Below are positions 15,762-52,189 of a DNA stretch of 64,000 bases, piece after piece (the stretch's first letter is position 1; each line of letters opens with the position of its first letter). Origin of the DNA: Octopus sinensis (taxonomy: Eukaryota). Position numbers and translations under genes: made by a program. Where the stretch lies: contig NC_043006.1 of the NCBI RefSeq assembly GCF_006345805.1, forward strand, positions 97,092,001-97,156,000. The letters are read 5' to 3'. The notes beneath the pieces are model-generated. The model ran no database searches. It was not told the DNA's origin and was given only the letters and a program-made list of their open reading frames with translations.

Positions 15762-15794
<33 letters not shown>

Positions 15795-16480: not shown

Positions 16481-16484
16481 AGCA

Positions 16485-16512
16485 TATATACATACATACA
16501 TACATACATACA

Positions 16513-16545
<33 letters not shown>

Positions 16546-16756
16546 CCATCCATTCATCCATCCAAACATACATACATGCATACATACATACATACGTACG
16601 TACGTACGTTCGTACGTACATACATACATACATACATACATACAAACATACATACAAACATACATACATACATACATACATACATACACACATACATACA
16701 TACATACATACATACATACATACATACATACATACATACATACATACATGCATACA

Positions 16757-16788
<32 letters not shown>
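16485..16788. repeat. (CATA)n array
   Basis: Direct reading. Confidence 0.95.
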
Positions 16789-16789
<1 letters not shown>

Positions 16790-16790
<1 letters not shown>

Positions 16791-21575: not shown

Positions 21576-22479
21576 GTTATTTAAATACTTTTATTTTTCA
21601 AAATTAAAATAAACAAATTTCTTTTTTAATCTAAAATATACTCTCCTTCGTTTTCTACAATGCCCTTCAATCTATCAGGTAGACTTGCAAGGTCCCTCTT
21701 CCAAAATTCACTTGTCCGTGACGAAAAATACTTCTTCAGTACTGTCCTGAACTCGTCTACAGAATTCATATTTTTTCCGTCCAAATGATTTTGAAGACTG
21801 CGGAATAAATGATAATCAGATGGAGCAATGTCCGGCAAATACGGTGGGTGGGGCATTGTTTCCCATTCAAACTGCTCCAGCCTTTCGAATTTCCTCCTCG
21901 CTGTATGTCACCGAGCATTATCCCGATGGAAGAACATCTTTCGACTTGAAACCAAAGAGAGTCGTGTTCCTTTTAGCACTGACTTGAATGACTGGCTGAA
22001 TGACCAAACCCAAGCTTCTCTGCTAATTTCCCAACAGTTACGATGGGATTTTGTTCCATCGGGGTTTGCAGGACGTCCTCGTCGAGCTCCACAGATCTTT
22101 TAGGACGAGGCTCTTCTTCTAGGCTGTAGTTTCCGGCTCGGAATTTCTGGAATTACCGTTGACACTGGCTTATAGTTATTGTCCGATCCCCATATTCCAC
22201 TGCATTAATATTCCTCGCACTTTCCGTGGCGCTGTTGCCTTTATTGAACTCATAAAGCAAAACATACCGAATATACTCCTTTGCCACTTTCATTATAGCT
22301 TTGAAAAAATAACTGTTAAAATCGAACTGCACTCTTCAAAAGTTGCACTAAGAATAAGTACAAGGTAAAATTACTACCTGCTTTTATAGCAAGTTGATGC
22401 AGGTAGTTTATCCCGTCCCCTTCCGACTTTTAGTTCATGCAATTGAAAAAAAAAACGCATTATTTATGGGATGACCCAA
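21575..22479 (-). mobile_element. Mariner transposon, internally deleted pseudogene
   Basis: ORF HPPYLPDIAPSDYHLFRSLQNHL (YSPDLAP motif), RDNAR motif; TIR ...TTATTTATGGGATGACCCAA|TA at 22479; the other TIR is truncated. Confidence 0.9.
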
Positions 22480-23439
22480 TATGTGCGTATGAGTACATGT
22501 GAGAGTGTGCATGCATATGTGCATAGTTGTATGTGTGTGTGTGTACTTTTGTCTGCGTGTGCGTGCCTGTGTATACCTGCATATGTGTGTGTGTGTGTAT
22601 GCGTGCCAGTGTGTACCTGTATGTATGCTTGTGTGTGTATGTGTGTGTTTGCATGTGAACGTCTACTTGTTTGCCTGTCCGTGTTCGGTGAATTAACCAT
22701 AGAAACAAAAACCGATTGATTAAACACCATTCGTTTGCTATAATTTGAACAAACTGCTGGCTATTTCCACGTGACCCGGCTTCTACATTTCGCTAATGTG
22801 AAATTTCTATCATTCGTAAGTATATAATTTAATGCCGCTGAAAGCTTTACTTACAGATTAAACCAGACGTTCGATCGCTATTTATTCAAATGTTAGCACA
22901 ATGAGTCCATTAAAAAAAATATCGCAGAGGTGTGTTTTCTTTCGTGTCTTTTTTTAACTCTTGTGCTTTTTTTTGTCACAAATATTGCACCTGCTGATTA
23001 GAAAAGATAAGAAAACAACGTGTTAACATATAATGATATAATATATATAGTGGAAATTGATTTATCTCCCCTTTTTCGTTCCGTTCTTCCTTAAGTTGAT
23101 CACATCATAACAATGTGGTTATTAGGTGCCGCAGTACTATTGAAATGTAAATAGACCTAGATATTGTTGTTATTGTGTTAAGTGTTTCTTAATGTTGTTG
23201 TGGATGCTGTTGCTGCTGTATTTGTTGTTGATGTTGTTGCCATTTCAGTTTTATTGTTTTTGTTCAAACCATCTAGTCAATACCACTCTCCCAGTAACGT
23301 CACATTCTCATTTTAAGTTTTAAGAGTCCAGCGAAATAATTTATGTTTTAACGATTTTCGTGGTCGCCATATCAAAAAGACTTCATTGAATGTCCTGCAT
23401 AATGTCTAAACAAATGAAACTATATTCATCCCTGTATTT

Positions 23440-23442
23440 ATT

Positions 23443-23520
<78 letters not shown>

Positions 23521-23649
23521 GATCTGTCTATCTATATATCTATCTATCTATCTCAATCTATCTATTTATCTATCTATCTATTTATCTATCTATCTAATCT
23601 ATCTATCTATATATCTATCTATCTATATCTATCTATCTATATATCTATA

Positions 23650-23684
<35 letters not shown>

Positions 23685-23743
23685 TTATCTATCTAATCTA
23701 TCTATCTATCTATCTATCTATCTTATCTATCTATCTATCTATC

Positions 23744-23807
<64 letters not shown>

Positions 23808-23824
23808 CTATCTATCTATCTATC

Positions 23825-23889
<65 letters not shown>

Positions 23890-23960
23890 GTCTCTCTATC
23901 GATCTATCTATCATCTATCTTCTTATCTATCTATCTACCTATCAATCTAACTACCTATCC
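23440..23960. repeat. (TATC)n array
   Basis: Direct reading. Confidence 0.95.
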
Positions 23961-27787: not shown

Positions 27788-28521
27788 TTGTTATGGGTAT
27801 GATACAGATGGTACATACTAAACGTTTTGAAGATCTTGTGGATAGGCGAAAATAGTTTTGCAGAGTGCCTGTTTAATAAGGGGTGTTTAGCATATAGGTT
27901 TTTCGATCTCCAAGATGCTTATACTGAATACCGAAAAAACTTGCAGCCGCTGCCTGACAAAGTCATATGAAAGCTTATATACTAAACACTTCCTACTAAT
28001 TAGACACTCTGAAAGACTGTTTTCGTGAAGCCGCAAAATCTTCAAAACATTCAACTCGGTACTATATCTGTACCTAGGATAATCCCACTAAAATGATCGC
28101 TGTGACCTCTCCGCGGAGAAGTGAAAACATTATTAGTTCAGTGACAAATATTATTAGCGCAAGAACGGGGGACAACTCCGATTTATTAGGTTTTATTAGC
28201 CATCCTCAACGAAGTATAGTCATTGAACTAATAGGCTTTCCTCATTTGCATAAATGTTTCTAATTAGAGTTATGATAGCCTGCATAATTATGTTTGTCCC
28301 AAATTTAATTATTGATTTTTCAGGCGCCTGATGTCTAGGATAATTATCTTCAGTGATTTATTTAATTTATGTGAGTGTAGGTGTGTGGGTGAGGTGCGCT
28401 CGTGTGTGTGTGTGTGTGTATGTGTGTGTGGTGTGTGTGTGTGTGCTAAAATGTATGACATGAACTAACTTTTCTTAAACACATACACACGCATATATAT
28501 TCACACATACATACCTACAAT

Positions 28522-33591: not shown

Positions 33592-33691
33592 NNNNNNNNN
33601 NNNNNNNNNNNNNNNNNNNNNNNNNNNNNNNNNNNNNNNNNNNNNNNNNNNNNNNNNNNNNNNNNNNNNNNNNNNNNNNNNNNNNNNNNNN
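33592..33691. other. Assembly gap (100 N)
   Basis: Run of N. Confidence 1.
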
Positions 33692-34377
33692 CTCAGGTTG
33701 TTTTCATGCACTTTGGGACACTATTATCTCGTTTCTGGCTAACAAATGGTTACAGCTAAATGTAATACATTTTATTTATCCAATATATGACAAAATTAAT
33801 TTAATAAAGAGTTTCAAGGCCGAAACATTGATCTAATATCCTCCAAAGGAGATATTAGTCCTTTCTCGAAAAAGTACCACTCTAGAAAATGAATATTGCA
33901 TGTCGTGCATTGTTACAAATTCCTAGTTTGGAATCGACTAGCAGTAATCTGCATCAGGATGACCTTGTATACTGAACAGCTGAAAAAACTTGCAAAATTA
34001 TATGCCAGGTCAGTTTAGCAACATACTGAAGTTAAATAGACCATGTTGGGTAACACTTCTTTTTGAAGTTAATGTTACTTATGTAGATATCTGCAAGAGA
34101 ATCTCACTGGATTCCGGAGTAACAAAATATTTCCAGCAAGATTTACCCCTTTAAAGAGCAACCTGACTATATAGCCAGCCGAAAATATTTTTGGTTTAGA
34201 CGACCAACGTGAATTTCAGCACAAATCTCATTAGTACATTTGTGAAACACAATTTCAGTTTGTAAATAGTTGTGTTACAGCACCCAACATTATTTGGTGC
34301 GATATCTGAGCTCTGCGAATTTTGGGAGATATTTTTTCTACATTTTTTTCTTTGGCAATTGTTTTTCAAGTTTTAAA

Positions 34378-35371
34378 ATGGATAACAGTTTCATGCAATC
34401 AAGCAGTGAATCTGAATTTGAGAAGTTTTCAACGGAAGATACAAAGAAATTGAACACCATACAAGTGAAAAACAAAAGCATGTGCTGTATCAAAATGAAT
34501 TTAAAACTATTTTTACAAACAATTTTTCAGAAGAGACTGGACCTACTCATATGTGGAGTACCAAACTTCAATCCATAATTTAAAATCAGACCTGTCATCA
34601 AATGCATAAAAACGACTCTACAACCCAGGTACATACATGTAGTGATGCTGCTGTGTAAGGTTCAGCGCACATGCGCAGAATGGGATTGCTTCCAGTTGGC
34701 CACCGGAAGTCTTCCCCCATGCGCATGTGCGGGGAAACTGACCCCTAAAACGCTGTTCGCTCATTCATCCTTTCTGGCCCTAACAGCCTTCGAGAACGGA
34801 CGTGTACTGGCAGTCTCTGTGGACTTCATACCAGCCAAGCAGCGAACCACGACGAATCATTTCGACCAACAAACAAGAATCAGTACTACAGATTCGGCTG
34901 TCGGTTTCCCTCCAGAGAACACGTACACCAGTTCTACATTACGACGAGAAATAAACACCATTACTTTGCTGTGTTCGTAGACAACCTGACTTGTCTGTTA
35001 TTTTTAACTAAAATTGAAGGTGACGGGATCAGATCGGACACCCCTCCAGTGATACCGAATCCAGATCCTGTTACATACCTATCCGTTGATAAAGGCAGAA
35101 TACATTTCCTATGATATATGCCAGGAAAACCCACAAAGTAGGGAATCAAAGTCTGGAAGATTTGTGAAGCAAATATGGGGTACTGCTGTGGGTATAGTTA
35201 TAATTCAGAAAGAAGAGAAATGATCTAAGTCAGCATGGCCTAGGGCACAATGAAGTTTGGAATTTATCACTTCCATACCATAACCAGGACTGTATATCTT
35301 TTGACCAATTTTTTAGTTTAGTCAAACATGTGATGGATATAATTGCGACAACATACACATGTGCTACAGTA
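34378..35371 (+). pseudogene. piggyBac-family transposase, 5' half (deleted, frameshifted, LTR-interrupted)
   Basis: MDNSFMQSSSESEFE; FKIRPVI; YNPGTYLSVD (after removing the LTR); KGRIHFL*YMPGKPTK*GIKVWKICEA; HGLGHNEVWNL; FDQFFSLVKHVMDIIATTYTCATV. Confidence 0.85.
34638..35075 (+). mobile_element. Solo LTR (Gypsy-like), 438 bp
   Basis: TGTAGTGATGC...ATCCTGTTACA termini; AATAAA present; 4-bp flanks TACA/TACC; excision restores the YNPGTYLSVD reading. Confidence 0.8.
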
Positions 35372-35578
35372 GTGACACTGGATATTGGGAATCATAAGGA
35401 AATGACACCATTGCTGGAAGCCGTCTCCGGGGCCCACCTCGGAATTATCCATAAACTCATCATACATGGTGCAAATGTAAATGCTGTCGACAATGATGGT
35501 AATAATTGTTTACCCCTCTCCATAATAAAAAAAGAGAGGTTCCATTCTGAGGAGGAACATATTCCCATTTTAGATGAG
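35372..35578 (+). CDS. Ankyrin-repeat exon fragment (resembles Mind bomb-type E3 ligase ankyrin repeats), copy 1
   Basis: VTLDIGNHKEMTPLLEAVSGAHLGIIHKLIIHGANVNAVDNDGNNCLPLSI fits the ANK consensus TPLxxA..G...++..L+..GA.VN..D..G; ends GAG|GTAAGT. Confidence 0.75.
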
Positions 35579-38500
35579 GTAAGTTTTTAAAATTGTTTGT
35601 GAATATGTGTGTGTGTGGTTGGCATTAGGAAGGGTATGCAACCGCAGAAACTATGCCATAAGAAAATGACACCATTGCTTGAAGCTGTCTCCGGGGCCCA
35701 CCTCGGAATTATCCATAAAATTATCATACATGGTGCAAATGTAAATGCTGTCGACAATGATGGTAATAATTGTTTACATCTCTCCATAATAAAAAAAGAG
35801 ATATTCCATTCTGAGTTGGAAACCATTCCCATTTTAGATGAGGTAAGTTTTTAAAATTGTTTGTGAATATGTGTGTGTGTGGTTGGCATTAGGAAGGGCA
35901 TGCAACCGCAGAAACTATGCCATAAGGAAATAACACCATTGCTGGAAGCCGTCACCGGGGCCCACCTCGGAATTATCCATAAACTAATCATACATGGTGC
36001 AAATATGAATGCCAACGACAATGATGGTAATAATTGTTTAAATCTCTCCATAATAAAAAAAGAGATGTTCTATTCTGAGGTGGAAACCATTCCCATTTAA
36101 ATGAGGTAAGTTCTTAAAATTGTTTGTGAATATGTGTGTGTGTGGTTGGCATTAGGAAGGGCATGCAACCGCAGAAACTATGCCATAAGGAAATAACACC
36201 ATTGCTGGAAGCCGTCACCGGGGCCCACCTCGGAATTATCCATAAACTAATCATACATGGTGCAAATATGAATGCCAACGACAATGATGGTAATAATTGT
36301 TTACCCCTCTCCATAATAAAAAAAGAGAGGTTCCATTCTGAGGAGGAACATATTCCCATTTTAGATGAGGTAAGTTTTTAAAATTGTTTGTGAATATGTG
36401 TGTGTGGTTGGCATTAGGAAGGGCATGCAACCGCAGAAACTATGCCATAAGAAAATAACACCATTGCTGGAAGCCGTCTCCGGGGCCCACCTCGGAATTA
36501 TCCATAAAATTATCATACATGGTGCAAATGTAAATGCTGTCGACAATGATGGTAATAATTGTTTACCCCTCTCCATAATAAAAAAAGAGATGTTCTATTC
36601 TGAGGTGGAAACCATTCCCATTTTAGATGAGGTAAGTTTTTAAAATAGTTTGTGAATGTGTGTGTGGTTGGCATTAGGAAGGGCATACAACCGCAGAAAC
36701 TATGCCATAAGAAAATGACACCATTACTGGAAGCCGTCTCCGGGGCCCACCTCGGAATTATCCATAAACTCATAATACATGGTGCAAATGTAAATGCTGT
36801 CGACAATGATGGTAATAATTGTTTACATAGCTCCATAATAAAGAAAGAGATGTTCCATTCTGAGGTGGAAAAAATTCCCATTTTAGATAAGGTAAGTTCT
36901 TAAAATTGTTTGTGAATATGTGTGTGTGGTTGGCATTAGGAAGGGTATGCAACCGCAGAAACTATGCCATAAGAAAATGACACCATTGCTTGAAGCTGTC
37001 TCCGGGGCCCACCTCGAGATTATCCATAAACTCATCATACATGGTGCAAATATGAATGCTGTCGACAATGATGGTAATAATTGTTTACACCTCTCCATAA
37101 TAAAAAAAGAGATATTCCATTCTGAGGTGGAAACCATTCCCATTTTAGATGAGGTAAGTTCTTAAAATTGTTTGTGAATATGTGTGTGTGGTTGGCATTA
37201 GGAAGGGCATGCAACCGCAGAAACCATGCCATAAGAAAATGACACCATTGCTTGAAGCTGTCTCCGGGGCCCACCTCGGAATTATCCATAAACTCATCAT
37301 ACATGGTGCAAATATGAATGCCGTCGACAATGATGGTAATAATTGTTTACACCTCTCCATAATAACAAATGAGATGTTCCATTCTGAGGTGGAAACCATT
37401 CCCATTTTAGATGAGGTAAGTTTTTAAAATTGTTTGTGAATATGTGTGTGTGTGGTTGGCATTAGGAAGGGCATGCAACCGCAGAAACTTTGCCATAAGA
37501 AAATAACACCATTTCTGGAAGCCGTCTCCGGGGCCCACCTCGGAATTATCCATAAAATTATCATACATGGTGCAAATATGAATGCCAACGACAATGATGG
37601 TAATAATTGTTTACACCTCTCCATAATAAAGAAAGAGATGTTCCATTCTGAGGAGGAGCATATTCCCATTTTAGATGAGGTAAGTTTTTAAAATTGTTTG
37701 TGAATATGTGTGTGTGGTTGGCATTAGGAAGGCATGCAACCACAGAAACTATGCCATAAGAAAATAACACCATTGCTGGAGCCGTCTCCGGGGCCCACCT
37801 CGGAATTATCCATAAACTCATAATACATGGTGCAAATATGGATGCCAACGACAATGATGGTAATAATTGTTTACACCTCTCCATAATAAAGAAAGAGATG
37901 TTTTATTCTGAGGTGGAAAATATTCCCATTTTAGATGAGGTAAGTTTTTAAAATTGTTTGTGAATATGTGTGTGTGGTTGGCATTAGGAAGGGCATGCAA
38001 CTGCAGAAACTATGCCATAAGAAAATAACACCATTTCTGGAAGCAGTCTCCGGGGCCCACCTCGGAATTATCCATAAAATTATCATACATGGTGCAAATA
38101 TGAATGCCAACGACAATGATGGTAATAATTGTTTACACCTCTCCATAATAAAGAAAGAGATGTTCTATTCTCAGGTGGAAACCATTCCCATTTTAGATGA
38201 GGTAAGCTTTTAAAATTGTTTGTAAAATATGTGTGTGTGTGGTTGGCATTAGGAAGGGCATGCAACCGCAGAAACTATGCCATAACAAAATAACACCATT
38301 GCTGGAAGCCGTCTCCGGGGCCCACCTCGAAATTATCCATAAACTCATCATACACGGTGCAAATGTAAATGCTGTCGACAATGATGGTAATAATTGTTTA
38401 CACCTCTCCATAATAAAAAAAGAGATGTTCCATTCTGAGGTGGAAAATATTCCCATTTTAGATGAGGTAAGTTCTTAAAATTGTTTGTGAATATGTGTGT

Positions 38501-39846
38501 GTGGTTGGCATTAGGAAGGGCATGCAACCGCAGAAACTATGCCATAAGAAAATAACACCATTTCTGGAAGCCGTCTCCGGGCCCACCTCGGAATTATCCA
38601 TAAACTTATCATACATGGTGCAAATGTAAATGCTGTCGACAATGATTAATAGGTAACATTGTTACACCTCTCCATAAAAAAAAGATGTTCCATTCTGAGG
38701 TGGAAAATATTCCCATTTTAGATGAGGTAAGTTCTTAAAATTGTTTGTGAATGTGTGTGTGTGGTTGGCATTAGGAAGGGCATGCAACCGCAGAAACTAC
38801 GCCATAAGAAAATAACACCATTGCTTGAAGCCGTCCGGGGCCCACCTCGGAATTATCCATAAACTCATCATACTGGTGCAATATAATGAATGCCGTCGAC
38901 ATGATGGTAATAATTGTTTACACCTCTCCATAATAAAAAAAGAGATGTTCTATTCTGAGGTGGAAAATATTCCCATTTTAGATGAGGTAAGTTCTTAAAA
39001 TTGTTTGTGAATATGTGTGTGTGTGGTTGGCATTAGGAAGGGCATGCAACCGCAGAAACTATGCCATAAGAAAATAACACCATTGCTTGAAGCCGTCTCC
39101 TCCGGGGCCCACCTCGAATTATCCATAAACTCATCATACATGGTGCAAATGTAAATGCTCTCGACAATGATGGTAATAATTGTTTACACCTCTCCATAAT
39201 AAAAAAAGAGATTTCCATTCTGAGGTGGAAACCATTCCCATTTTAGATGAGGTAAGTTTTTAAAATTGTTTGTGAATATGTGTGCGTGTGGTTGGCATTA
39301 GGAAGGGCATGCAACCGCAGAAACTTTGCCATAAGAAAACAAAACTATTTCTGGAAGCCGTCTCCGGGGCCCACCTCGGAATTATCCATAAACTTATCGT
39401 ACATGGTGCAAATATGAATGCCAACGACAATGATGGTAATAATTGTTTACATCTCCATAATAAAGAAAGAGATGTTCCATTCTGAGGTGGAAACCATTCC
39501 CATTTTAGATGAGGTAAGTTTTTAAAATTGTTTGTGTGGTTGGCATTAGGAAGGGCATGCAACCGCAGAAACTATGCCATAAGAAAATAACACCATTGCT
39601 GGAAGCCGTCACTGGGGCCCACCTCGGATTATCCATAAAATATAATTATCATACATGGTGCAAATATGAATGCCAACGACAATGATGGCGATAATTGTTT
39701 ACACCCCTCTCCATAATAAAGAAAGAGATGTTCTATTCTGAGGTGGAAACCATTCCCATTTTAGATGAGGTAAGTTTTTAAAATTGTTTGTGAATATGTG
39801 TGTGTGGTTGGCATTAGGAAGGGCATGCAACCGCAGAAACTATGCC
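35393..39846 (+). repeat. Tandem array of 17 x ~262-bp units (ankyrin exon + donor + intron start + SINE piece)
   Basis: Unit starts (CATAAG/CATAAC) near 35393, 35657, 35921, 36184, 36446, 36707, 36968, 37230, 37494, 37755, 38016, 38281, 38544, 38804, 39066, 39330, 39579. Confidence 0.95.
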
Positions 39847-40782
39847 AAAACTGGCAATTGGTGCCTGAGCAGCTCTGCAGCTGCCCAGCTTCTGCCGAAC
39901 TATCCAACCCATGCCAGCATAGAAAACGAATTAAAAATGATGATGAGGAGGATGTGTGTATGTGTGAGTGAGAGAAATAGAGAAACAGGCAGATATTGTT
40001 GGCTATTTTCTTTCACTCCCATCCACTTCTCTTCCTTTAGTATTAAATAGTTCAGTTTCCCCCCTGATAGCACTAGTTGTATTATGTAACTAACAATATT
40101 CCATCTTCTTTCACCTTCAAAAGCATGGCCACTGCACTGTAAAGAATGTAACCCATCTTAAATATGTGTCATGTAACACTGCTATCACTGTATGAAGGAG
40201 AGGTGACCAACGACAGAGATAAGTCTTTAAATTTAGAAAAGAGAAATTCACAAACTGTTTTAAATATCGAATTTCAAGTTAACGAGTTGAACTGTGTTAA
40301 TTGCTAGAAAGCATACTTCATTATTCTTTTTCAAAGAAAGGAAAAGGAAAATAAATTGTTTATGGACAATTAAATTTAAAGAAAACATACTCATGGAATT
40401 CGAAGAAAGTTTCTTTTATCAGTATGACAATGAATATATAACTGAGTTTATTCAAAGTTGATAATTAGGGTTCCAAATATTGCCAGGGATTGGACTTTGT
40501 GTGTATATTGACTACAGTAATACCCCTTGCAATGATTGTAAAGAAGGGAGATGTGAGGAGAATGAATTTACATTAAGATGTGTGCACAAAAGTGCAATGT
40601 CCCGAGATTGTATGTATGATGATGTAACTAGACAGATAGTCTAGAGGCCCTTTGTTACCAACAAGATAGCTCTCTGAACTTTGCCCTGCTTAATCTTATT
40701 CTAGCAGCTATGCTCTTGGCGCATCCACCTCCACTACTGACCTGATTACCTATATAACACAGTAGCTATCAACCACTTCTAG

Positions 40783-40837
<55 letters not shown>

Positions 40838-41179
40838 TGAATAGTCGAATATTTAGATATATATTGTGGATGTCCGCTTGCTTTACATGGTACAATCATG
40901 GTTTATATTATTATTATTTTAATATTAGTGACTTTTTGTGTGGTTATACGGACTGTTAAATATATATGCCTGCTTCAAATTTAAATGTGAGTGTACATGT
41001 ATTTCCTTGATGTTGGTTATAGAACTATGAGTTCAATATGGAACATTATTGTGTTTGTTAATGTATATTGATATATATTGTTTATATTGTATTATTGTGT
41101 ATATATATGTGTAGAATTATGAGTGTGTATGCACACATTTTTATATTTATATGTAAATTTTTTTCATACTTACATTAAA

Positions 41180-41290
41180 TTCTCTGAAGAGGCCGTGAGA
41201 CATTCTTGTTAATGTCTCATTTATACCTGCTTTATATGGCTAATAGGTTAAATGGGACATACCTGTCTTCACGGCCGAAACAGCTGTCAG
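41180..41290 (+). ncRNA. Type-I hammerhead ribozyme motif (family F)
   Basis: CT-CTGAAGA-GGCCGTGA[...]TCACGGCC-GAAA-CAGCTG-T-C-AG; palindromic helix III, only 2-bp helix I. Confidence 0.6.
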
Positions 41291-41877
41291 CTACAATGTA
41301 AATGTATTTTTATTTCTATGTCTTGTTATATTTGTAATATATTATGTATAATGTCATTACTGTTGTGTAATGGTTTAATATTGATTGGGTATTATCTGAT
41401 GGTTGATGATTGATTTAGGTATGTTTCTCCATTTTCTCATTTTGTATATATATATATATAATATATATATATGTGTGTGTGTGTGTGGTGTGTGTGGTGT
41501 GTGTGTGTTTGTTTGAAAGACCTCAGCATCTATCCACTGGTAGATCTGATGGTGTTTATTGTCTGTTGTTGCAGAATTTAAGCAACTCTTTGATTCCCTA
41601 ATATGTAACGGTCACTACAGATGTGTGTAGAAAGGGATCCTTAGTCGTAGTGAAGGCAATCTATCTAGGGAGATAACCTTATAATAAATCACTCGGTCCG
41701 TTTAGAAATACTGGGTTGACGTCCAGCGGGAACAGCTTTGTTTCATGGAGGTGGAAAGATCTTCTTTAGTACATGGTTGTACAATGCTTTCCAATGTGCG
41801 CAGTAGTGGCGCGCGCACACATTATTAGCCATTTGAAAAGACTATGAGTCTCGACCATGGTCGAAAATGATGATGAT

Positions 41878-42500
41878 GCTAGTAGAAAAGGGTTGTCAGT
41901 GGATATGAAAAAAGCAAAATTAAAACAAAAAAAAAGTGAAATAATCCAAGAGCTGAAAAGAAATCTATCTACCTATGCACAACCATGTGTAGATGAAAAC
42001 GGCACCCTGTTTGTAAACCTTGATTATAACAGGTACATGGGCAGCGTAGATCAGCTGAATCAAATAATAAGCTATTATCCAGTTGGTACACTGGGTAATA
42101 AATGATGGTGATACCTGGATGTCCTTCCTAACACACACCACCACTCCAAGCGTGTAGCCAACCATTCCAAGAGTGTTCATATTATATAGCAAATCAGGAG
42201 GGGCTTGAAGCAGCGTGACCATCTGCAGCTCTCCAAGCAACTGTAGCAACACAGTTGAGGAAACGTTATTCCTTCAACAAAATAGGACAGAAAGCCAAAG
42301 CCTGCCAGAGAGACATCCCTCTCAATTAAGCCAATCTCCACAATAAAAAAAAATTAAAAAATTGAGGGTGCCGTGAATGGCTGCATCAACAAAACTCCCA
42401 GTGGATGGACAGTTGAAACTTCTTTCCAATGGGCATTTTGCAAGGGCGCAATATGTAGAATGGGATGTTTTACAAGTTTCTATGACAGAAATATTGTGAA
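41878..42500 (+). pseudogene. piggyBac-family transposase, 3' half
   Basis: ASRKGLSVDMKKAKLKQK; DYNRYMGSVDQLNQIISYY; K*W*YL; Cys-rich tail CKGAICRMGCF. Confidence 0.85.
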
Positions 42501-43299
42501 TATTATTATTATATACCGAATATTACCGTTGATTGTTGAAGTATAAAGACGTGTTTTCACTCCTCTCCACGCTGGTCAGCAGCAAGCTTCACAGCTACAA
42601 ACGAAATTGACCGTCACTTATATTCCTATTCATTCGAAACCACGCGTTTCTCGACTCGTGAGTAGACTTTTCTTTAACTACAAATTATTTCCAGAAATTT
42701 AAGCAAAACTACACACTCTTATGAGAGAGTATTTATTTATATATACACCCCGTCAACACCTTCTGTTAACTAAAGGATCACCCACCCAATAAAAAATAGA
42801 AGAAAAAAAAGAAGAAAAGAAAGAAATTTTACTGCAAGCTCATAATTCAAATACAATCACATATTTCTAAGTATTCCAGCCAATATTCTGTACAATCTAT
42901 TTTATTCTACATACTTCTCCCTAAACAAAGAATAAATTTTTTTTTAAATGTATGATTACATTTTATAAATATTTTCAAATTTACTTTGTTTCTACTTTTT
43001 TTTGCCTGTAAATTGCAATTTACCTGTAAGGTGACAAGTTCTGATTTAACTTCTATTGTAAATCTTTATTATATACATTTTTAAGTATTCATGTATGTGT
43101 GCAAGTTTTATAAAAACACAACGGGATTTTTTCAAGCATCGAATGGTTAAGAGGGCCTATCTGAGTAAAATAGGAAACAAGAGGGTCCACAAGTAAAAAA
43201 TGGTCGAGAACACCTATTCTAGATGGTTCTTTTGCCAACAACAACCCATGCTGCTGACACATGTTTAGAGTACTGCCAGAATTGAAAAACAGTCAGCTA

Positions 43300-44350
43300 C
43301 TGTCCAGCAATGATGCCTCCAAAGAATCCATGTTAAAATCACGGTATAGCAACAGCTTGTTCATGTGAGAGGCCAAGTAACGGACCAATCACGTAACAGA
43401 TCCATCAGACATCATTTAACAGAAAACTCTTGGAGCTTCTAAGATATTCTCTAAACAAGACCTACAAATAGGCACATTTCTGAGCGCCAATTTTTAGTGT
43501 GTGGCAACATGCAGCTCAGCTCCATAAACTCTCTTGCTGTTTTTAATAATGGTTATCAGAGCTCTTATGCAACTATAAGATTCCGTTAGAGTTGGCCGAT
43601 ATGAATTCAAAGTGTATATTTTCTCCTGTCTTGGCAAGCTTAATTACAAAGCCTTCTTAATCAACAATTTGTAATAGCTACAGGATTATTTTTCACATTG
43701 TATCAAATTCGTTGCAGCAGCTATTTCACAACCAACAAGAAAATTACTTGTGCAGTGAAATAAATCTCGTTAATTTATCACAGGTGTTGTGCATTCATTA
43801 CATGCAGAACTGTCAATATTCTGTCATTTCCTATTCATGATAATCCTACCGGCCATGACATAAGTTTAAGACTGGTTCTCTATAAGAATTGCCTTAAAGC
43901 CAATGATCTAATTCTCAGAGCTGAATCTATATCAGAATTAGAGAGAAAACGCCAAGTATGGAAGACAGACCGAAAATAGAAGACAATAAATCGGGGTAAA
44001 TTATTCAATTTCAGGTAAAAGGTAAAAATAAAATTCTTGAGGGAAATGAGGACTCGTTAGACATAAATTATATAAAAAACGTGTTCCTTGCTATGACAGA
44101 AATTTTTCTTCTTCCAACACTGCATCTGTCCAACATAATGGACATGTAAATAGATTCAATAAACATTTTGAATTCAAAGAATCTATGATTTTCTTCCTTT
44201 CAAATAAAGTGGGTAACATTGGCATAAATAGATATATTTTAGGGTAATTGGTTAAAAAAGTTCCCAGACCTACAACAATTTGGCTATAAAGCAAATTTAG
44301 CAAAGACTCATCACCCACATTGTCTAATCCCTCCCTCAAACCACTTCACT
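43300..44350 (-). mobile_element. Highly decayed LINE RT fragment (L1/Tx1-like)
   Basis: Minus-strand GFVIKLAK and NSYRPTLT remnants; many stops. Confidence 0.3.
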
Positions 44351-45589: not shown

Positions 45590-45870
45590 AGTGGCATATA
45601 AAAAGCACCATCCGTTCGTGGACGGTGGCACATTAAAAGCACCATCCGATCGTGGCCGTTTGCCAGACTCGTCTGGTACCTGTGCCGGTGGCACGTAAAA
45701 AGCACCCACTACACTCATGGAGTGGTTGGCATTAGGAAGGGCATCCAGCTGTAGAAACATTGCCAGAAACTGGGCCTGGTGCAGCCTTCTGGCTTCCCAG
45801 ACCCCAGTTGAACCGTCCAACCCATGCTAGCATGGAAAGTGGACGCTAAACGATGATGATGATGATGAAC
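45590..45870 (+). mobile_element. RTE-tailed SINE/LINE 3' end ending in (GAT)n
   Basis: GGTTGGCATTAGGAAGGGCATCCAGC..GGACGCTAAACGATGATGAT; copies at 50520-50900, 51720-51975, 55722-56155(-), 59176-59411, and a piece in every ankyrin unit. Confidence 0.8.
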
Positions 45871-46360: not shown

Positions 46361-46977
46361 TAACAATTGCTAACAATTCGGCCAACTTGTTGCCTTGTAA
46401 CTGATGGTTTGAAATTTTGACACAAGACCAGTAGTTTTAGGGAGAGGATAATTTGATTACATCAATCCCCAGTACTTGGCTGGTCCATATTTTATTGACC
46501 CCTAAAAGCATGAAAAGCAAAACTGACCAGAATGAAATTTGAACCTTGGACGTAAAACCAGATGAAATACCACTAAGCATGCCAATAATTCTGCCAGCTT
46601 GCCCACCTTGTATCATAATAATTATGTTGTTGATTGGTTCAAATTTTGGCACAAGGCCAACCATTTCGAGGGCAGGGTTCATTGATTACATAAACCCAAG
46701 TACTCAATTGGAACTTATCTTTATCAAATCTTGAAAGGATGAAGGGCAAAATCAACCTTGGCAACATCTGAACTCAGAAAGTAGCTACATGTTTGCTGGT
46801 GAGAGAGAAAAACTGTATCACAGAAACAATCAGCTGTAAACATGTGTCATCATAGCCATGTAGGATAGGCTTTTGCAGAGTGCTGATGACACTACAACAA
46901 GAGTCTCCTACATTCAGAATGAGGAGTGCCTTTGGACCAAGCCATTGCATTACTTCATTCTGATTTTCTCAAGGTAT

Positions 46978-47749
46978 TGTAGTGATGCCATCTTGGAAAT
47001 CTCCAGCACGCATGCGCAGAGCTGGATTCTTCCAGGAGGCCTGCCAGAAGTTCCCTCATGCGCATGCGCAGAGCTGGATTCTTCCGGGAGGCCCGCCAGA
47101 AGTTCCCTTATGCGCATGTGCAGAGCTGGATTCTTCCGGGAGGCCCGCCAGAAGTTCCCTTATGCGCAGAGCTGGATTCTTCCGGGAGGCCCGCCGGAAG
47201 TTCCCTCATGCGCATGCACAGAGCTGGATTCTTCCAGGAGGCCCGCCGGAAGTTCCCTCATGCGCAGAGCTGGATTCTTCCAGGAGGCCCGCCAGAAGTT
47301 CCCTCATGCGCAGAGCTGGATTCTTCCGGGAGGCCCGCCAGACGTTTGCGCATGCGCAGAGCTGGATTCTTCCTGGAGGCCCGCCAGAAGTTCCCTCATG
47401 CGCATACGCAGAAAACTAGCAGCAGCGAAATTCCCTTGTATCGTTCTCTCGAACGCCAGCAGCTGAACAAGACAGTCGTGTTTTATCAGCTCTCTCAAAC
47501 TGCTACCTCGTGGCGTGTCTCTGCTATGCCTGAACGGACAGGATTTGGCTCACTCCACTTGACTACTGTGATAAGCTCCTAGGCTGCCGATTCGCCCAGA
47601 AAGAAGAATGTATACATTGCGAATCAAGAAATAAATATTTATACTGTTGAAGTTAAATCGGAAGTCTTGACTCTTTCCTTCGATTAATATTTAATGTAAA
47701 AGGATGCGAGCTGCACCCTTCCAGTGCAGGGACCTCCCATCCTGTTACA
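46978..47749 (+). mobile_element. Solo LTR with perfect 4-bp TSD
   Basis: GTAT|TGTAGTGATGC...ATCCTGTTACA|GTAT; same termini as 34638-35075; AATAAA at ~47631. Confidence 0.9.
47010..47408 (+). promoter_or_regulatory. 8 tandem 46/52-bp repeats in the LTR carrying NRF1-like, GC-box and ETS-like motifs
   Basis: Unit GCGCAGAGCTGGATTCTTCCRGGAGGCCCGCCRGAAGTTCCCTCAT(GCGCAT); TGCGCATGCGCA, CCCGCC and CCGGAAGT are visible. Confidence 0.6.
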
Positions 47750-49689: not shown

Positions 49690-50520
49690 TCTCAGGCAGA
49701 TTGTAAGATACCTGTGTGTAAACAGCTATGCTACACAGCAGTGAAACATGGGTTGTGACAGCTGAGGACATGCATAGGCTTCAAAGAAATGAAGCCAGTA
49801 TGCTTCGCTAGATATGCATGCTAATAGAGTGTAAACATCTTGAGAGAAAAGTCGAGCATAAGAAGCATCAGATGTGATGTGCAAGAGAGACAACTGTGCT
49901 GGTATGGTCATGTGATACAGATGGATGAAGACAGCTGTGTAAAGAAGTGCTAATTTCTGTGGAGGGAACCTGTGGTGGAGGTAGACTCAAGAAGACATGG
50001 GATGAGGTGGTGAAGCATGATCTTCCAACTTTGCGCCTCACAGACGCAATGGATGGAAGCACTCCGTCGGTTACGACGACGAGGGTTCCGGTTGATCTGA
50101 ATCAACGGAACAGCTTGCTCGTGAAATTAACGTGTAAGTGGCTGAGCACTCCACAGACACGTTCACCCTTAACGTAGTTCTCGGGGATATTCAGCGTGAC
50201 ACAGAGAGTGACAAGGCCGGCCCTTTGAAATACAGATACAACAGAAACAGGAAAAAAGAGTGAGAGAAAGTTGTGGTGAAAGAGTACAGCAGGGATCACC
50301 ACCATTCCCTGCCGGGGCCTCATGGAGCTTTAGGTGTTTTCACTCAATAAAAATTCACAACGCCCGGTCTGGGAATTGAAACCGTGATCTTATGACCGCG
50401 AGTCCGCTGCCCTAACCACTGGGCCATTGCGCCTCCACACAGACGCAATGACTAGTGATGGAAACTTTTGGCAATATGCTGTGCTTGAGAAAACCCGTCA
50501 AGCCAACTGAAATCATAGTC
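49690..50520 (+). mobile_element. RTE LINE 3' ORF2 fragment interrupted by a SINE
   Basis: SETWVVTAEDMHRLQRNEASML; WYGHVIQMDEDSCVKKC; GRLKKTWDEVVKHDL. Confidence 0.75.
50052..50437 (-). mobile_element. tRNA-derived SINE family 2 with TSD
   Basis: 13-bp TSD CACAGACGCAATG at 50039-50051 and 50438-50450. Confidence 0.9.
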
Positions 50521-52189
50521 ATGGCTGATGGTTTGTAACTGGCACCAATGACAGTGGCACATAAAAAGCACCTTTTGAGTGTTGGGCCTCACAGAGGCAA
50601 AGTGGCTGAGCTCCTTTCAAGAGTTGGGTCTCATGAAGACAATGACCAAGACCTTTGGCATTATGTCCAGCTTGAGAAGACCCGTCAAGTAAAATCACAA
50701 CTGTGGCAGATACTAATATCATGCAAATGGTACATAAAAGCACCCATTACATTCTCAGAGTAGTTGGCGTTGGGAAGAGCATCCAGCTGTAGAAACCATG
50801 CCAAATCAGACTGGAGTCTGGTGCAGCCTTCTAGCTTGCCAGCCCTGGTCAAACTGTTCAACCCAAGCCAGCATGGACAACAGATGCTAAATGATGATGA
50901 ATCGACCCCAATACTTGTTTCCAGTTTTAAAGCAGTGGTGGGAAACAAACACAAAGACACACACGACGGTCTTCTTTCAGTTTCCGTCTATCAAATTCAC
51001 TCACAAAGCTTTGGTTGGCCTGATACTTGCCCAAGGTGAAACACAGTGGGACTGAACCTAGAAATATGTGGTTGGGAAGCAAGCTTCTTACCACACAGCC
51101 ATATGGACCAAACAGAATCCACTGAAGCAGATTTACAGCCAGATACACTTCCTATTGCAACCAAACATCGCTGCTTGTTTGATAGAGATGATCATTTACA
51201 ATTAGTTTGCGATGTCAAGACAAGGCAATTATGAGCACACACACACACACGATGGGCTCCTTTCAGTTTCCGTCTAGCACTTACAAGGATTTTTTCAGAT
51301 TGGGGCTGTAGTAGAAGGCACTTAACCCATGGTGTTACTCAATGGGGTTGTGCCAGTGCCCATATGATTACAATGTGAATTTCTTAGCCACAGTCATGTC
51401 TGTATCCACACACACACAAATGATGAAATACGAGCACAATAATAATGAAACCATCAAGCATCAAATCCTGTACTAGACTGGTACTATATAATTTTAGTGA
51501 CCCCAGAGGGATGAGGAAAGACTAAGTTGACCTCTATGAGATTTGAATACAGAATGTAAAAAGAAGAAATACAGCAAGACATTTTGTCCAAGATTTTAAT
51601 GGTTCAGCCAAGCCACAATTTCTGACTCAGACACAAGGCCAGAAATTTAGCTAAGTAAATTGGACCCAGGACTTGACTCGGAACCCTTGTTAATTGAATG
51701 ACAATAATATTATAGTAATATGCCAGCCTCGCCTGGCCTCCGTGCCGGTGGCACATAAAAAGCACCATCCGATCGTGGCCGTTTGCCAGACTCGTCTGGC
51801 ACGTAAAAAGCATCCACTACACTCATGGAGTGATTGGCGTTAGGAAGGGCATCTAGCCGTAGAAACATTGCCAGATCAAACTGGGCCTGGTGCAGCCTTC
51901 TGGCTTCCCAGACCCCAGTTGAACCGTCCAACCCATGCTAGCATGGAAAGCGGATGCTAAACGATGAACGATGATAAGTATATACAAATCAACAACCATG
52001 ATTGTAGAGTCCAAGAAGTATAAAGTTCCAATTGAGATGAGGATCCAAGAGAGGAGGAAAAGGAAGTTCGGTCAGGCTGGATCAAACTGCATATAAGTAG
52101 ATATACATGCTCACACGAATACATTTATAGGTTATGTCTGCAGAGATACATTGTGTCCAAGCACTTATAACATGGATACACAACTCTCT

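What the first reader, a model, noticed from the sequence alone, without database searches (positions are those of the whole stretch)
34378..42500. piggyBac transposase split at one codon by a 6.5-kb host-gene-derived insert, fused in frame to ankyrin
Seen: the 5' half ends ..TYTCATV (35371) and the 3' half resumes ASRKGLSVDMKKAKLK (41878). These are adjacent segments of the piggyBac T-Y-x-C-G-T-V-R-x-N-R-K-G-L motif, and about one codon is missing. The insert begins mid-exon, in frame (TCATV|VTLDIGNHK), and holds the ankyrin array, intron-like DNA and a hammerhead element. There is no clear TSD, only TG microhomology. Inference: a templated insertion or gene-fragment capture inside a DNA transposon, or a segment-swapping rearrangement (a weak TIR-like TTAGCCATTTGAAAA and the palindrome TCGACCATGGTCGA sit just left of the right junction). 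Upstream stops mean the fusion is not a full transposase chimera.
Basis: partly seen in the sequence, partly recalled or inferred. Interest (0 to 1): 0.7.

Follow-up and report, generated by a model that had tools for sequence, protein, structure and literature searches.

The report
Gene fragment inside dead piggyBac transposon
A long-dead piggyBac transposon in an octopus genome is interrupted at one codon by two stacked insertions, a small retroposon and a copied piece of an ankyrin (MIB2-like) gene that later grew into a 17-copy tandem repeat; this is ordinary genome decay rather than a working fusion gene.

Summary
The core observation holds. Two collinear pieces of one decayed piggyBac transposase (PGBD4-like, mollusc family) end at 35371 (..TYTCATV) and resume at 41878 (ASRKGLS..). 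Relatives read ..CGTI-M-ANRKGLP.., so exactly one residue is missing.

The 6.5 kb between them is not one insert:
- **Gene fragment, 35371-41627.** A DNA-level copy of part of an octopus "E3 ubiquitin-protein ligase MIB2-like" ankyrin gene. It starts 5 nt into an exon and runs into the downstream intron, 94-95% identical to the single-copy O. sinensis/O. vulgaris locus.
- **Tandem array inside it.** A 262-bp piece (180 nt of exon plus 82 nt of intron and SINE start) was amplified in place to 17 copies. Without the array and two window-specific segments, the fragment is about 1.1 kb.
- **Retroposon-like piece, 41637-41877.** It has a stem-loop and a (GAT)3 tail, and is flanked by a target-site duplication made of piggyBac codons (GTAGAAAGGG / GCTAGTAGAAAAGGG).

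The gene fragment has no transposon ends and no duplication of its own. It shows 1 nt of junction overlap and about 7 nt of target loss. Break-repair insertion is the most likely mechanism, but that step is inferred.

The in-frame ankyrin fusion is incidental. The piggyBac frame carries stops, and 7 of 17 array units are broken. The hammerhead is not confirmed.

The parts
34378..34635 (+). piggyBac fossil, 5' part a. N-terminal remnant (MDNSF.., ..FSEETGPTHMW..) followed directly by ..PNFNP*FKIRPVIK.., which matches relative residues ~209-232. About 100-150 codons are deleted internally, with a frameshift and a stop.
   Evidence: Frame translations; tblastn with P0008 and P0017.
34636..35042 (.). 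Nested repeat inserted in the piggyBac, related to the tandem repeat at 46978-47121.
   Evidence: It falls between adjacent residues of the relatives. blastn finds 75-77% identity to 46978-47121.
35043..35371 (+). piggyBac fossil, 5' part b. Reads ..YLSVD..KGRIHFL*YMPGKPTK*GIKVW..LGHNEVWNLSLPYHNQD..DQFFSLVKHVMDIIATTYTCATV and ends with the Val codon GTA at 35369-35371.
   Evidence: Pfam PF13843; PDB 9c0f and 6x67; tblastn, 49-54% identity to P0017.
35371..35394 (+). Start of the copied gene fragment: nt 6-29 of the ankyrin exon (..VTLDIGNH..), not part of the repeat unit. Base 35371 (A) is shared with the piggyBac Val codon.
   Evidence: blastn aligns 35371-35661 to L001 9970-10258. The exon starts at L001 9965, after ..ccacaaag.
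35395..39847 (+). Tandem array of 17 units of ~262 bp. Each unit equals L001 9994-10255: the last 180 nt of the exon, GTAAGT.., a (TG)n run, and the first ~50 nt of an old SINE copy. Unit-to-unit joints read ..ATGCCA|TAAG.. with CA microhomology. Ten units keep an open exon. Units 3, 10 and 13-17 are broken.
   Evidence: TRF; unit alignment; distances; ORF list.
39848..41627 (+). Rest of the copied intron. 39848-40305 and 40666-40790 match L001 10256-10830. 41456-41627 matches L001 14629-14788. An old 5'-truncated SINE copy lies at 39804-39971. Two segments are window-specific: 40306-40665, and 40836-41455 inside an (AT)n run.
   Evidence: blastn at 94.4%, 95.2% and 90.1% identity; boundary views; SINE family hits.
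41166..41307 (+). Hammerhead-like motif inside the window-specific 620-bp segment: CUGAAGA, a long helix II, GAAAC-AGCU-GUC, and flanking helix I. Not validated.
   Evidence: Fold -44.2 kcal/mol, z=-5.1. The motif with helix II closure is expected 0.04 times per shuffled window. No Rfam match.
41627..41636 (+). Left copy of the retroposon's target-site duplication, GTAGAAAGGG. It is a piggyBac remnant covering codons (A)GT AGA AA(A) GGG, i.e. S R K G.
   Evidence: Direct repeat with 41882-41892. Homology to the source gene ends at 41627.
41637..41877 (+). Retroposon-like piece (a SINE or a 5'-truncated LINE 3' end). It ends in the stem-loop TCGACCATGGTCGA (41851-41864), then AAAAT, then (GAT)3 (41869-41877).
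   Evidence: It matches neither the source gene nor the rest of the window. An abundant (GAT)n-tailed family in the window has the same 3' layout. It is flanked by a duplication. Its body is not significantly similar to that family.
41878..41892 (+). Right copy of the target-site duplication, GCTAGTAGAAAAGGG, coding A S R K G. This is where the piggyBac resumes.
   Evidence: Relatives read ..M-A-N-R-K-G-L-P.., so GCT (Ala) is piggyBac sequence.
41878..42504 (+). piggyBac fossil, 3' part. Reads ASRKGLSVDMKKAKLK..DYNRYMGSVDQLNQIISYYPVG..NK*W.. and a Cys-rich C-terminus (..ETSFQWAFCKGAICRMGCFTSFYDRN), with stops and deletions.
   Evidence: phmmer over 1.84 billion representatives; tblastn with P0008, P0017 and P0020.

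Best explanation
An old, non-functional piggyBac copy (PGBD4-like mollusc family) in an Octopus-type genome was hit twice within a few bases, inside the codons for the C-G-T-V/I-M-A-N-R-K-G motif.

**First hit (order inferred).** A small retroposon with a stem-loop and a (GAT)n tail was inserted by target-primed reverse transcription. It duplicated about 15 nt of piggyBac (GCTAGTAGAAAAGGG).

**Second hit.** A piece of roughly 1.1 kb (at most ~2.1 kb) of genomic DNA was pasted immediately upstream of the left duplicate. It was copied from a MIB2-like ankyrin gene: the exon minus its first 5 nt, plus the start of the downstream intron with an old SINE. It replaced about 7 nt (ATG+GCTA). It has no target duplication, no transposon termini and at most 1-3 nt of overlap at the joints. 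That is the signature of double-strand-break repair, either end-joining capture of a DNA fragment or synthesis templated on an ectopic locus.

**Amplification.** Within the pasted fragment, a 262-bp stretch was then duplicated head-to-tail at a CA microhomology. Unequal exchange expanded and reshuffled it to 17 copies (4.45 kb), which have since diverged by about 6% and partly decayed. Two further segments (360 bp, and 620 bp inside an (AT)n run) are either later insertions or were lost from the compared species.

**Function.** Nothing here needs to function. The in-frame transposase-ankyrin junction is a 1-in-3 accident in a frame already closed by upstream stops.

**Shown versus inferred.** Shown: the anatomy, the source gene type, the duplication flanking the retroposon, and the decay. 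Inferred: the order of events and the break-repair mechanism.
For: One piggyBac copy, split at one residue:
- Continuous Pfam, PDB and relative alignments across the junction.
- The same best relatives for both halves.

Source gene:
- The array unit is 95% identical in protein to P0001, MIB2-like isoform X2 of O. vulgaris/O. sinensis.
- At its loci L001/L002 the unit is single-copy and collinear with the window: 35371-35661 matches L001 9970-10258; 39578-40305 matches 9992-10713 at 94.4%; 40666-40790 matches 10708-10830; 41456-41627 matches 14629-14788.
- The exon limits come from P0001 and P0003 mapping: DSV.. starts at L001 9965 and ..ILDE|gtaagt ends at 10177.
- Exon 2 of P0001 is absent from the window.
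- The fragment contains the intron and an intronic SINE, so it is not a copy of a spliced mRNA.

Array:
- 17 units with CA joints and mosaic shared variants.
- Mean pairwise distance 6.0%; unit to source gene 5.4-9.0%.
- The compared species have one copy.

Retroposon:
- Source-gene homology stops at 41627.
- GTAGAAAGGG / GTAGAAAAGGG flank 41637-41881. A shared exact 7-mer at two random boundaries occurs 1.4% of the time, and the extra GGG lowers this to about 5e-4 by my estimate.
- The stem-loop plus (GAT)3 tail matches the 3' layout of an abundant family in the same window.

Order of events:
- GCT (Ala) upstream of the right duplicate fits the family consensus M-A-N-R-K-G.

No function:
- Stops, a frameshift, an internal deletion and a nested repeat in the piggyBac.
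- 7 of 17 exon copies are broken.
- 19 synonymous, 38 non-synonymous and 0 stop unique substitutions, not clearly different from neutral.
- No protein in the 5.8-billion-sequence database spans the junction or several array modules.
Against: - The mechanism of the gene-fragment insertion is inferred from negative features only: no duplication, no transposon ends, no tail.
- Two independent insertions in the same orientation within ~7 nt of each other would happen by chance only a few percent of the time. This hints at a link I cannot explain, such as a re-used LINE endonuclease site or a fragile site.
- The same-species source gene was not available. The age of the event, whether the array arose before or after copying, and the status of the two window-specific segments are therefore all open.
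- The body of the retroposon-like piece is not significantly similar to the (GAT)n-tailed family. It also carries Helitron-like end marks: A|TC at 41637-41639, and a hairpin followed 14 nt later by CTAG|T.
- No reads were available to confirm the assembly or the array copy number.
Confidence: 0.65

Rival explanations
1. RNA-mediated insertion. The gene fragment is a 5'-truncated reverse transcript of unspliced MIB2-like pre-mRNA. It was made by the same LINE machinery that inserted the neighbouring (GAT)n-tailed retroposon, at a re-used endonuclease site, with a small target deletion instead of a duplication.
For: - The two insertions are within ~7 nt of each other and in the same orientation.
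- The fragment's left end is arbitrary, as with 5' truncation. Its right end (..CAGATGTGTG) has a GATG like the tail repeat.
- (GAT)n-tailed retroposons are abundant in the window.
Against: - There is no tail or stem-loop at the fragment's 3' end and no flanking duplication.
- The fragment retains about 1 kb of intron.
- A template-switch chimera would put the duplicate to the left of the gene fragment, not between the fragment and the retroposon.
Confidence: 0.12
2. Transduplication. A still-mobile piggyBac acquired the gene fragment, for example by abortive gap repair after excision. The chimera then transposed, and this is one decayed copy of a Pack-type family.
For: - A host gene fragment lies inside a DNA transposon, with loss of only a few nt of transposon sequence.
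- piggyBac families are active in O. vulgaris (PMC13282606).
Against: - No TIRs or TTAA ends are detectable.
- The copy has an internal deletion, stops and nested repeats.
- No second copy exists in the window or in ~70 kb of other Octopus loci.
- No relative in the protein database carries the junction.
- The retroposon duplication shows the neighbourhood was already collecting junk insertions.
Confidence: 0.06
3. Helitron involvement. The right end (a hairpin, 14 nt, then CTAG before a T) is a Helitron 3' terminus. On this reading either the whole insert is a 5'-truncated gene-carrying Helitron, or the last 245 bp (A|TC..CTAG|T) is a small non-autonomous Helitron.
For: - Only 2 places in 128 kb of both strands show a GC-containing hairpin followed within 5-20 nt by CTRR+T, and one is exactly here.
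- The canonical features are as described for Helraiser (PMC4778049).
- Mollusc Helitron-type elements carry tandem arrays (PMC7492417).
Against: - There is no 5' TC at 35372, and source-gene homology starts right at the junction.
- Helitrons make no target duplication, yet a 10/11-nt direct repeat flanks the 245-bp piece.
- CTAG overlaps the piggyBac codons GCT AGT, and Ala fits the family consensus.
- A stem-loop plus (GAT)n tail is the layout of local retroposons.
- No other copy of the terminus exists in the DNA at hand.
Confidence: 0.04
4. Assembly artefact: a chimeric join or collapsed/expanded repeat near the 100-N gap at 33592-33691.
For: The assembly is a draft with a gap 1.7 kb upstream. 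Arrays of 17 near-identical units are hard to assemble.
Against: - A misjoin would not place two halves of one ORF in the same orientation with adjacent codons on either side.
- It would not create a matching duplication either.
- The units differ by 3-9%, enough to be ordered by long reads.
- Only the copy number is really at risk.
Confidence: 0.04

Closest known systems
piggyBac superfamily / PGBD4-like transposases of molluscs (e.g. XP_033758852.1 Pecten maximus; Ostrea edulis, Argopecten relatives)
   Same: - DDE_Tnp_1_7 domain.
- The YMPxKPxKWGIK, DxFF, CGT(I/V)MANRKGLP and DYNxxMGGVD motifs.
- A Cys-rich C-terminus.
- 40-57% identity in blocks.
   Different: - The copy is dead: stops, frameshifts and ~100-150 codons deleted.
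- It carries nested insertions.
- No TIRs or TTAA ends could be found.
- No close (>60%) relative exists in the protein databases.
Insertions of ectopic genomic DNA at repaired double-strand breaks ('filler DNA' / templated insertions; gene-fragment duplication without a transposon)
   Same: - An unspliced genomic fragment is copied.
- There is no target duplication and there are no transposon ends.
- The joints show 1-3 nt of overlap.
- A few nt of target are lost.
   Different: Kilobase size is at the upper end for such events. The mechanism is not demonstrated here. The adjacency to a retroposon junction is unexplained.
Pack-type transduplication (Pack-MULEs and similar) and Helitron gene capture
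   Same: A host exon-plus-intron fragment sits inside a transposon sequence.
   Different: There is no evidence of mobility, no terminal repeats or Helitron ends bounding the chimera, and only a single copy in the data.
Tandem repeats born from pieces of genes or transposons (proto-satellites; TE-to-tandem-repeat conversion, PMC6947457; mollusc Helentron-borne arrays, PMC7492417)
   Same: A short unique segment duplicated at a microhomology and then expanded by unequal exchange into a kb-scale array with mosaic variants.
   Different: The unit is a chimera of coding exon, splice donor, intron and SINE start. The array sits in a copied gene fragment, not within a Helentron frame. It is known from one locus only.
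Stringent-type LINE/SINE 3' ends (stem-loop plus short tandem-repeat tail) with target-site duplications
   Same: A stem-loop, an A-rich spacer and a (GAT)n tail abutting a duplicated target. The same layout occurs in an abundant family in the window.
   Different: The body is not significantly similar to that family. No partner LINE was identified. The left duplicate is 1 nt shorter and lacks its first 4 nt.
CSB-PGBD3-type host-piggyBac fusion genes (from my own knowledge)
   Same: Transposase and host exon lie in one reading frame.
   Different: There the piggyBac ORF is intact and spliced to host exons. Here both partners are fragments, the frame is closed upstream, and no transcript or protein is on record.

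Membership tests
piggyBac transposon | DDE_Tnp_1_7 transposase homology, collinear along the element | tested here: met
   Pfam PF13843, E=9.5e-12, across the junction. Relatives P0017 209-343 and 345-567 map in order.
piggyBac transposon | Terminal inverted repeats flanked by a TTAA duplication | tested here: not met
   No TTAA-anchored or free inverted match between 33692-34400 and 42400-43600 exceeds chance. The left end may lie in or beyond the N gap.
piggyBac transposon | Intact transposase ORF (autonomous element) | tested here: not met
   Several stops, frameshifts, an internal deletion and nested insertions.
Pack-type / transduplicating DNA transposon | Host fragment lies between functional transposon ends, and the chimera occurs in several copies | tested here: inconclusive
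   The host fragment is shown. Transposon ends were not found. There is no second copy in 64 kb plus ~70 kb of Octopus loci. No whole genome was available.
Helitron | 5'-TC start, 3' hairpin plus CTRR end, insertion between A and T, no target duplication | tested here: not met
   The 3' marks are present. But there is no TC at 35372, and a 10/11-nt direct repeat flanks the terminal piece.
Non-LTR retroposon (SINE or truncated LINE) for 41637-41877 | 3' tail of simple repeats abutting a target-site duplication; 3' stem-loop | tested here: met
   (GAT)3 tail, stem-loop at 41851-41864, and duplicates at 41627-41636 and 41882-41892.
Non-LTR retroposon (SINE or truncated LINE) for 41637-41877 | Sequence homology to a dispersed repeat family | tested here: not met
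   Only the last ~23 nt resemble the (GAT)n-tailed family. The local alignment score of 12 equals the shuffle mean. No other copy is at hand.
Ankyrin-repeat gene (MIB2-like) exon | Ank repeat profile match and homology to an annotated gene, with the same exon-intron boundary | tested here: met
   Pfam Ank 3.3e-13. 95% identity to P0001. The ..ILDE|GTAAGT boundary is shared with L001.
Functional multi-exon ankyrin gene (array as coding exons) | Open frames in all units, usable splice sites in phase, signs of purifying selection, and a transcript or protein on record | tested here: not met
   The splice donor is kept, and a CAG| acceptor would give 195-nt phase-0 exons. But 7 of 17 units are broken, the synonymous/non-synonymous ratio is near neutral, and no such protein is in the database. 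Transcription could not be tested.
Hammerhead ribozyme | Conserved core in a three-way junction recognised by family covariance models; self-cleavage | tested here: inconclusive
   The core CUGAAGA..GAAAC..GUC and a three-helix fold with z=-5.1 are present. No Rfam hammerhead model matches at E<=10. Cleavage cannot be tested here.

The most novel reading that the evidence does not exclude
The 262-bp array is, or recently was, a newborn coding gene. Each unit keeps the GAG|GTAAGT donor and an in-phase ..CCGCAG| acceptor. Splicing unit to unit would string together 65-codon modules of about two ankyrin repeats each into a long ankyrin solenoid. On this reading, the excess of variation in the exon part over the intron part (57/180 against 14/82, p=0.016) reflects diversification of a binding surface rather than noise.
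Probability: 0.04. Interest if true: 0.65.

Novelty: new member of a known kind. Interest (0 to 1): 0.3.

Why it matters
- It is a clean worked example of how an apparent transposase-host-gene fusion dissolves into stacked, unrelated events once the source locus and close relatives are aligned.
- It shows a coding exon, its splice donor, a piece of intron and a SINE start being turned into a 4.5-kb tandem repeat. This documents a route by which new satellite-like arrays arise from unique DNA.
- It shows that kb-scale gene fragments can be duplicated in octopus without any visible transposon vehicle.
- For annotation, the locus can spawn false 'MIB2-like', ankyrin or 'piggyBac-derived' gene models.

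Tried and rejected
- **Protein search with the stitched piggyBac pseudo-protein.** It found nothing.
- **TIR/TTAA search.** Negative.
- **Self-blast of the halves and insert pieces.** It returned only microsatellites and one repeat family.
- **Helitron reading.** I took it seriously because the hairpin plus CTAG|T motif is rare. I rejected it after finding the flanking direct repeat, the (GAT)n-tail layout and the Ala codon.
- **Overlap of the two halves.** I tested whether sequence just left of 41878 (..VSTMVENDDD) is a diverged duplicate of the piggyBac segment at 35320-35371. It is random at the DNA level (6 of 27 matches by eye), and HMMER alignments start at S9. Rejected.
- **Circular-permutation (eccDNA) origin.** The right-end 245 bp has no match upstream of the exon in L001/L002.
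- **Homology of the 245-bp piece to the abundant SINE.** A MAFFT alignment looked suggestive, but the similarity is not significant.
- **Second hammerhead-like motif at 28257-28353(-).** Unrelated in sequence.
- **Species identification.** The window holds no usable gene, and the eukaryote genome cannot be searched by DNA with these tools.

Full report
**What is there**

The window is a repeat-rich draft eukaryote assembly with a 100-N gap at 33592-33691. On the + strand, decayed piggyBac-type frames run from about 34378 to 35371 and from 41878 to about 42504.

Several results show that these are two parts of one transposase:
- Stitched together, they give a single uninterrupted match to Pfam DDE_Tnp_1_7 across the junction: E=9.5e-12, query 135-250 on profile 138-256.
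- They give a single alignment to the piggyBat transposase 9c0f.
- A full HMMER search with the clean window ORF 41857-42102 found a family of mollusc PGBD4-like proteins. The best full relative is XP_033758852.1 of Pecten maximus.
- A follow-up search gave 77 relatives. The same proteins (P0017, P0020, P0015, P0016) are the best matches of both halves: left 45-51% identity, right 31-57%.
- P0017 residues 288-343 end at 35371 (..TYMCGTI on ..TYTCATV). Residue 345 (ANRKGLP..) starts at 41878 (ASRKGLS..). Only M344 has no counterpart.

**State of the piggyBac**

The copy is a fossil:
- The N-terminal remnant jumps straight to relative residue ~209, so about 100-150 codons are lost.
- A ~400-bp foreign repeat sits at 34636-35042, between adjacent residues. 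It is related to the tandem repeat at 46978-47121.
- Stops interrupt YMPGKPTK*GIKVW and NK*W.
- The 3' half has deletions.
- No TIRs or TTAA ends could be found.

**Where the ankyrin DNA comes from**

One array unit is 95% identical in protein to P0001, 'E3 ubiquitin-protein ligase MIB2-like isoform X2' of Octopus vulgaris/O. sinensis. Its loci in both species, L001 and L002, hold the unit once, and they are collinear with the window:

| Window | L001 | Identity |
|---|---|---|
| 35371-35661 | 9970-10258 | 91% |
| 39578-40305 | 9992-10713 | 94.4% |
| 40666-40790 | 10708-10830 | 95.2% |
| 41456-41627 | 14629-14788 | 90.1% |

- In L001 the exon starts at 9965, after ..ttacttccacaaag, and reads DSVKLDIGNHKKMTPLLEAV... 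This boundary is confirmed by the paralogue P0003, which reads ..LLLNQ|DSVNLE...
- The exon ends ..ILDE|gtaagt at 10177.
- The window copy starts at L001 9970, so it lacks only the first 5 nt of the exon.
- It carries on through the splice donor into the intron, including an old 5'-truncated copy of an abundant SINE (39804-39971).
- Exon 2 of P0001 is not in the window.
- L001/L002 show no piggyBac homology next to the exon.

So the gene locus is the source type and the window holds a DNA-level partial duplicate. Whether the 5-6% divergence is paralogue age or species distance cannot be told. The window's species is unknown, and the genome cannot be searched by DNA here.

**The array**

TRF finds 17.0 copies of a 262-bp unit at 35393-39847, with 92% matches.
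- The unit equals L001 9994-10255. That is the last 180 nt of the exon, then GTAAGT.., a (TG)n run and the first ~50 nt of the SINE.
- Units are joined ..ATGCCA|TAAG.., a CA microhomology between the two ends of the segment.
- The array is preceded by 24 nt of unique exon sequence and followed by the collinear intron. It therefore arose by internal tandem duplication, not by insertion of a pre-made array.
- Units differ from each other by 3.4-8.9% (mean 6.0%) and from the O. sinensis copy by 5.4-9.0%. The last unit is the closest to the source.
- Variants are shared in mosaic patterns, as expected from repeated unequal exchange.
- Without the 16 extra units and the two window-specific segments (40306-40665, and 40836-41455 inside an (AT)n run), the pasted fragment is about 1.1 kb.

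**The right end is a different element**

Homology to the source gene stops at 41627 (..CAGATGTGTG). The sequence that follows is laid out in this order:
1. GTAGAAAGGG at 41627-41636.
2. About 240 bp that match nothing else available.
3. The palindrome TCGACCATGGTCGA at 41851-41864.
4. AAAAT.
5. (GAT)3 at 41869-41877.
6. GCTA.
7. GTAGAAAAGGG at 41882-41892, where the piggyBac frame (A S R K G) resumes.

The 10/11-nt direct repeat sits exactly at both boundaries. An exact shared 7-mer at two random boundaries occurs in 1.4% of trials. With the additional GGG I estimate about 5e-4.

A palindrome, an A-rich spacer and a (GAT)n tail are also the 3' layout of an abundant interspersed family in this window: 45722-45866, 59266-59411 and 55722-55866(-). 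The piece is therefore best read as a retroposon (a SINE or a truncated LINE 3' end) with its own target-site duplication made of piggyBac codons. Its body is not significantly similar to that family.

GCT (Ala) just left of the right duplicate fits the family consensus ..M-A-N-R-K-G... The original duplication was thus probably at least 15 nt (GCTAGTAGAAAAGGG), and the left copy has lost its first 4 nt. From this I infer that the retroposon came first. The gene fragment was then pasted immediately upstream and replaced about 7 nt (the Met codon plus GCTA).

The gene fragment's real right junction is at 41627.

**How the gene fragment got in**

- The left joint reads ..ACAGTA|GTGACACTGG, and one base (A, 35371) could belong to either partner.
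- The right joint reads ..GATGTGT|GTAGAAAGGG, with G/GT shared.
- GTA occurs on both sides.
- There is no duplication, no TIR, no 5'-TC, no tail, and a small target loss.
- The fragment is unspliced genomic sequence.

These features fit repair of a chromosome break by end-joining capture of a DNA fragment, or by synthesis on an ectopic template. That is my preferred mechanism (confidence about 0.65 for the whole scenario), but this step is inferred, not shown. The tight proximity and shared orientation of the two insertions is unexplained. It keeps alive an RNA-mediated alternative: reverse transcription of unspliced pre-mRNA at a re-used LINE endonuclease site.

**Helitron check**

A GC-containing hairpin followed within 5-20 nt by CTRR+T occurs at only two places in 128 kb of both strands, and one is exactly at 41851-41883. 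These are the canonical 3' marks of Helitrons (PMC4778049). Four things speak against the Helitron reading:
- There is no 5' end at 35372.
- Helitrons make no duplication, yet one is present here.
- CTAG overlaps codons that fit the piggyBac consensus.
- The stem-loop plus (GAT)n layout is explained by local retroposons.

I rate Helitron involvement at about 0.04.

**Function**

The frame is open from 35204 to the stop at 35588-35590, and it joins transposase and ankyrin codons in the exon's native frame.

In the array, each unit keeps GAG|GTAAGT, and a ..CCGCAG| acceptor would give 195-nt phase-0 exons. Against a coding role:
- Unit 3 has a stop, unit 10 a frameshift, and units 13-17 carry indels.
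- Unique substitutions in the exon part are 19 synonymous, 38 non-synonymous and 0 stop. About 21% synonymous is expected under uniform mutation (binomial p=0.024 before allowing for transition bias).
- No protein in the 5.8-billion-sequence database contains several modules or the junction.

I conclude the locus is non-functional. One oddity remains: the exon part carries more unique substitutions than the intron/SINE part (57/180 against 14/82, Fisher p=0.016).

**Hammerhead**

The segment 41166-41307 has CUGAAGA, a long helix II, GAAAC-AGCU-GUC and a flanking helix I. It folds at -44.2 kcal/mol, z=-5.1. The motif with helix II closure is expected 0.04 times per shuffled window. Yet no Rfam hammerhead model reports it at gathering score, at E<=1 on 9.3 kb, or at E<=10 on 191 nt. 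A second motif hit at 28257-28353(-) is unrelated in sequence. The status is inconclusive. The motif lies in a window-specific 620-bp segment and has no bearing on the main finding.

**Comparison and novelty**

All components are of known kinds: a decayed piggyBac, a nested retroposon with a duplication, a transposon-independent gene-fragment duplication, and the birth of a tandem repeat by microhomology duplication and unequal exchange. Reviews and mollusc examples are in PMC6947457 and PMC7492417. piggyBac and Helitron families in O. vulgaris are covered in PMC13282606.

It is not a member of the Pack-type or Helitron capture classes, because the defining ends and multiple copies were not found. 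It is a new instance of known processes, tidy but not surprising. Interest 0.3.

**Limits**

- No reads were available.
- The same-species genome could not be searched, so copy number in the genome, the empty or intermediate site, the same-species source locus and expression could not be checked.
- The order of events and the repair mechanism rest on a few nucleotides at the joints.

Noticed in passing
window 45600-45866(+), 59140-59411(+), 55722-55990(-), 50640-50900(+), 51710-51983(+); also 39804-39971 and L001 ~10215-10370, 22013-22161: An abundant SINE-like family. Its 3' end is the palindrome CCATGCTAGCATGG, then ..GGACGYTAAAC, then a (GAT)4-5 tail. A 5'-truncated old copy lies 36 nt downstream of the ankyrin exon in both the source gene and the window, and it supplies the last ~50 nt of each array unit.
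   Followed up: partly
window 41166-41307: A hammerhead-like three-way junction with a very long helix II, inside a 620-bp segment inserted in an (AT)n run. It has the core boxes and a stable fold, but no Rfam hammerhead model matches.
   Followed up: partly
window 46873-47582 and 34636-35042: A tandem repeat with a period of roughly 100 bp (ORF-like 'AQSWILPGGPPEVPSCACAELDSSGRPARSSLMR'). It is 75-77% similar to the repeat nested in the piggyBac 5' half.
   Followed up: no
window 35395-39847: Within the array, the exon part has about twice the density of unique substitutions of the intron/SINE part (57/180 against 14/82, p=0.016). Multi-nucleotide variants (ACC/AAT/CAT, coding T/N/H) echo residues seen in paralogues.
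   Followed up: partly
L001 10831-14628 (O. sinensis) versus window 40787-41472: The same (AT)n site in the intron carries a 3.8-kb insertion flanked by GCATAT in O. sinensis/O. vulgaris, and a different 620-bp insertion in the window. The microsatellite looks like a recurrent landing site.
   Followed up: no
window 21629-21907(-) and 49929-50174(+): A mariner-type transposase fragment (..PHPPYLPDIAPSDYHLFRSLQNHL..) and an RTE/LINE-type ORF2 tail fragment (..GGGRLKKTWDEVVKHDL..).
   Followed up: no
window 10035-10880, 13400-15850, 16330-16865, 23390-23950: Kilobase-scale degenerate tetranucleotide-type arrays, (ACAT)n-like and (TCTA)n-like, which give long spurious ORFs.
   Followed up: no
window 4000-6300: A GC-rich block (44-48% against ~35% around it) with strong negative GC skew (C excess), made of codon-like triplet repeats that translate as His/Pro/Ser/Asp runs. 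Its nature is unknown.
   Followed up: no
protein P0002 (metaclust, 61 aa): An environmental ORF 77% identical to the array unit also reads through the splice donor into ..ILDEVSF. Related exon-plus-intron-start sequence therefore exists in another cephalopod-like source.
   Followed up: no
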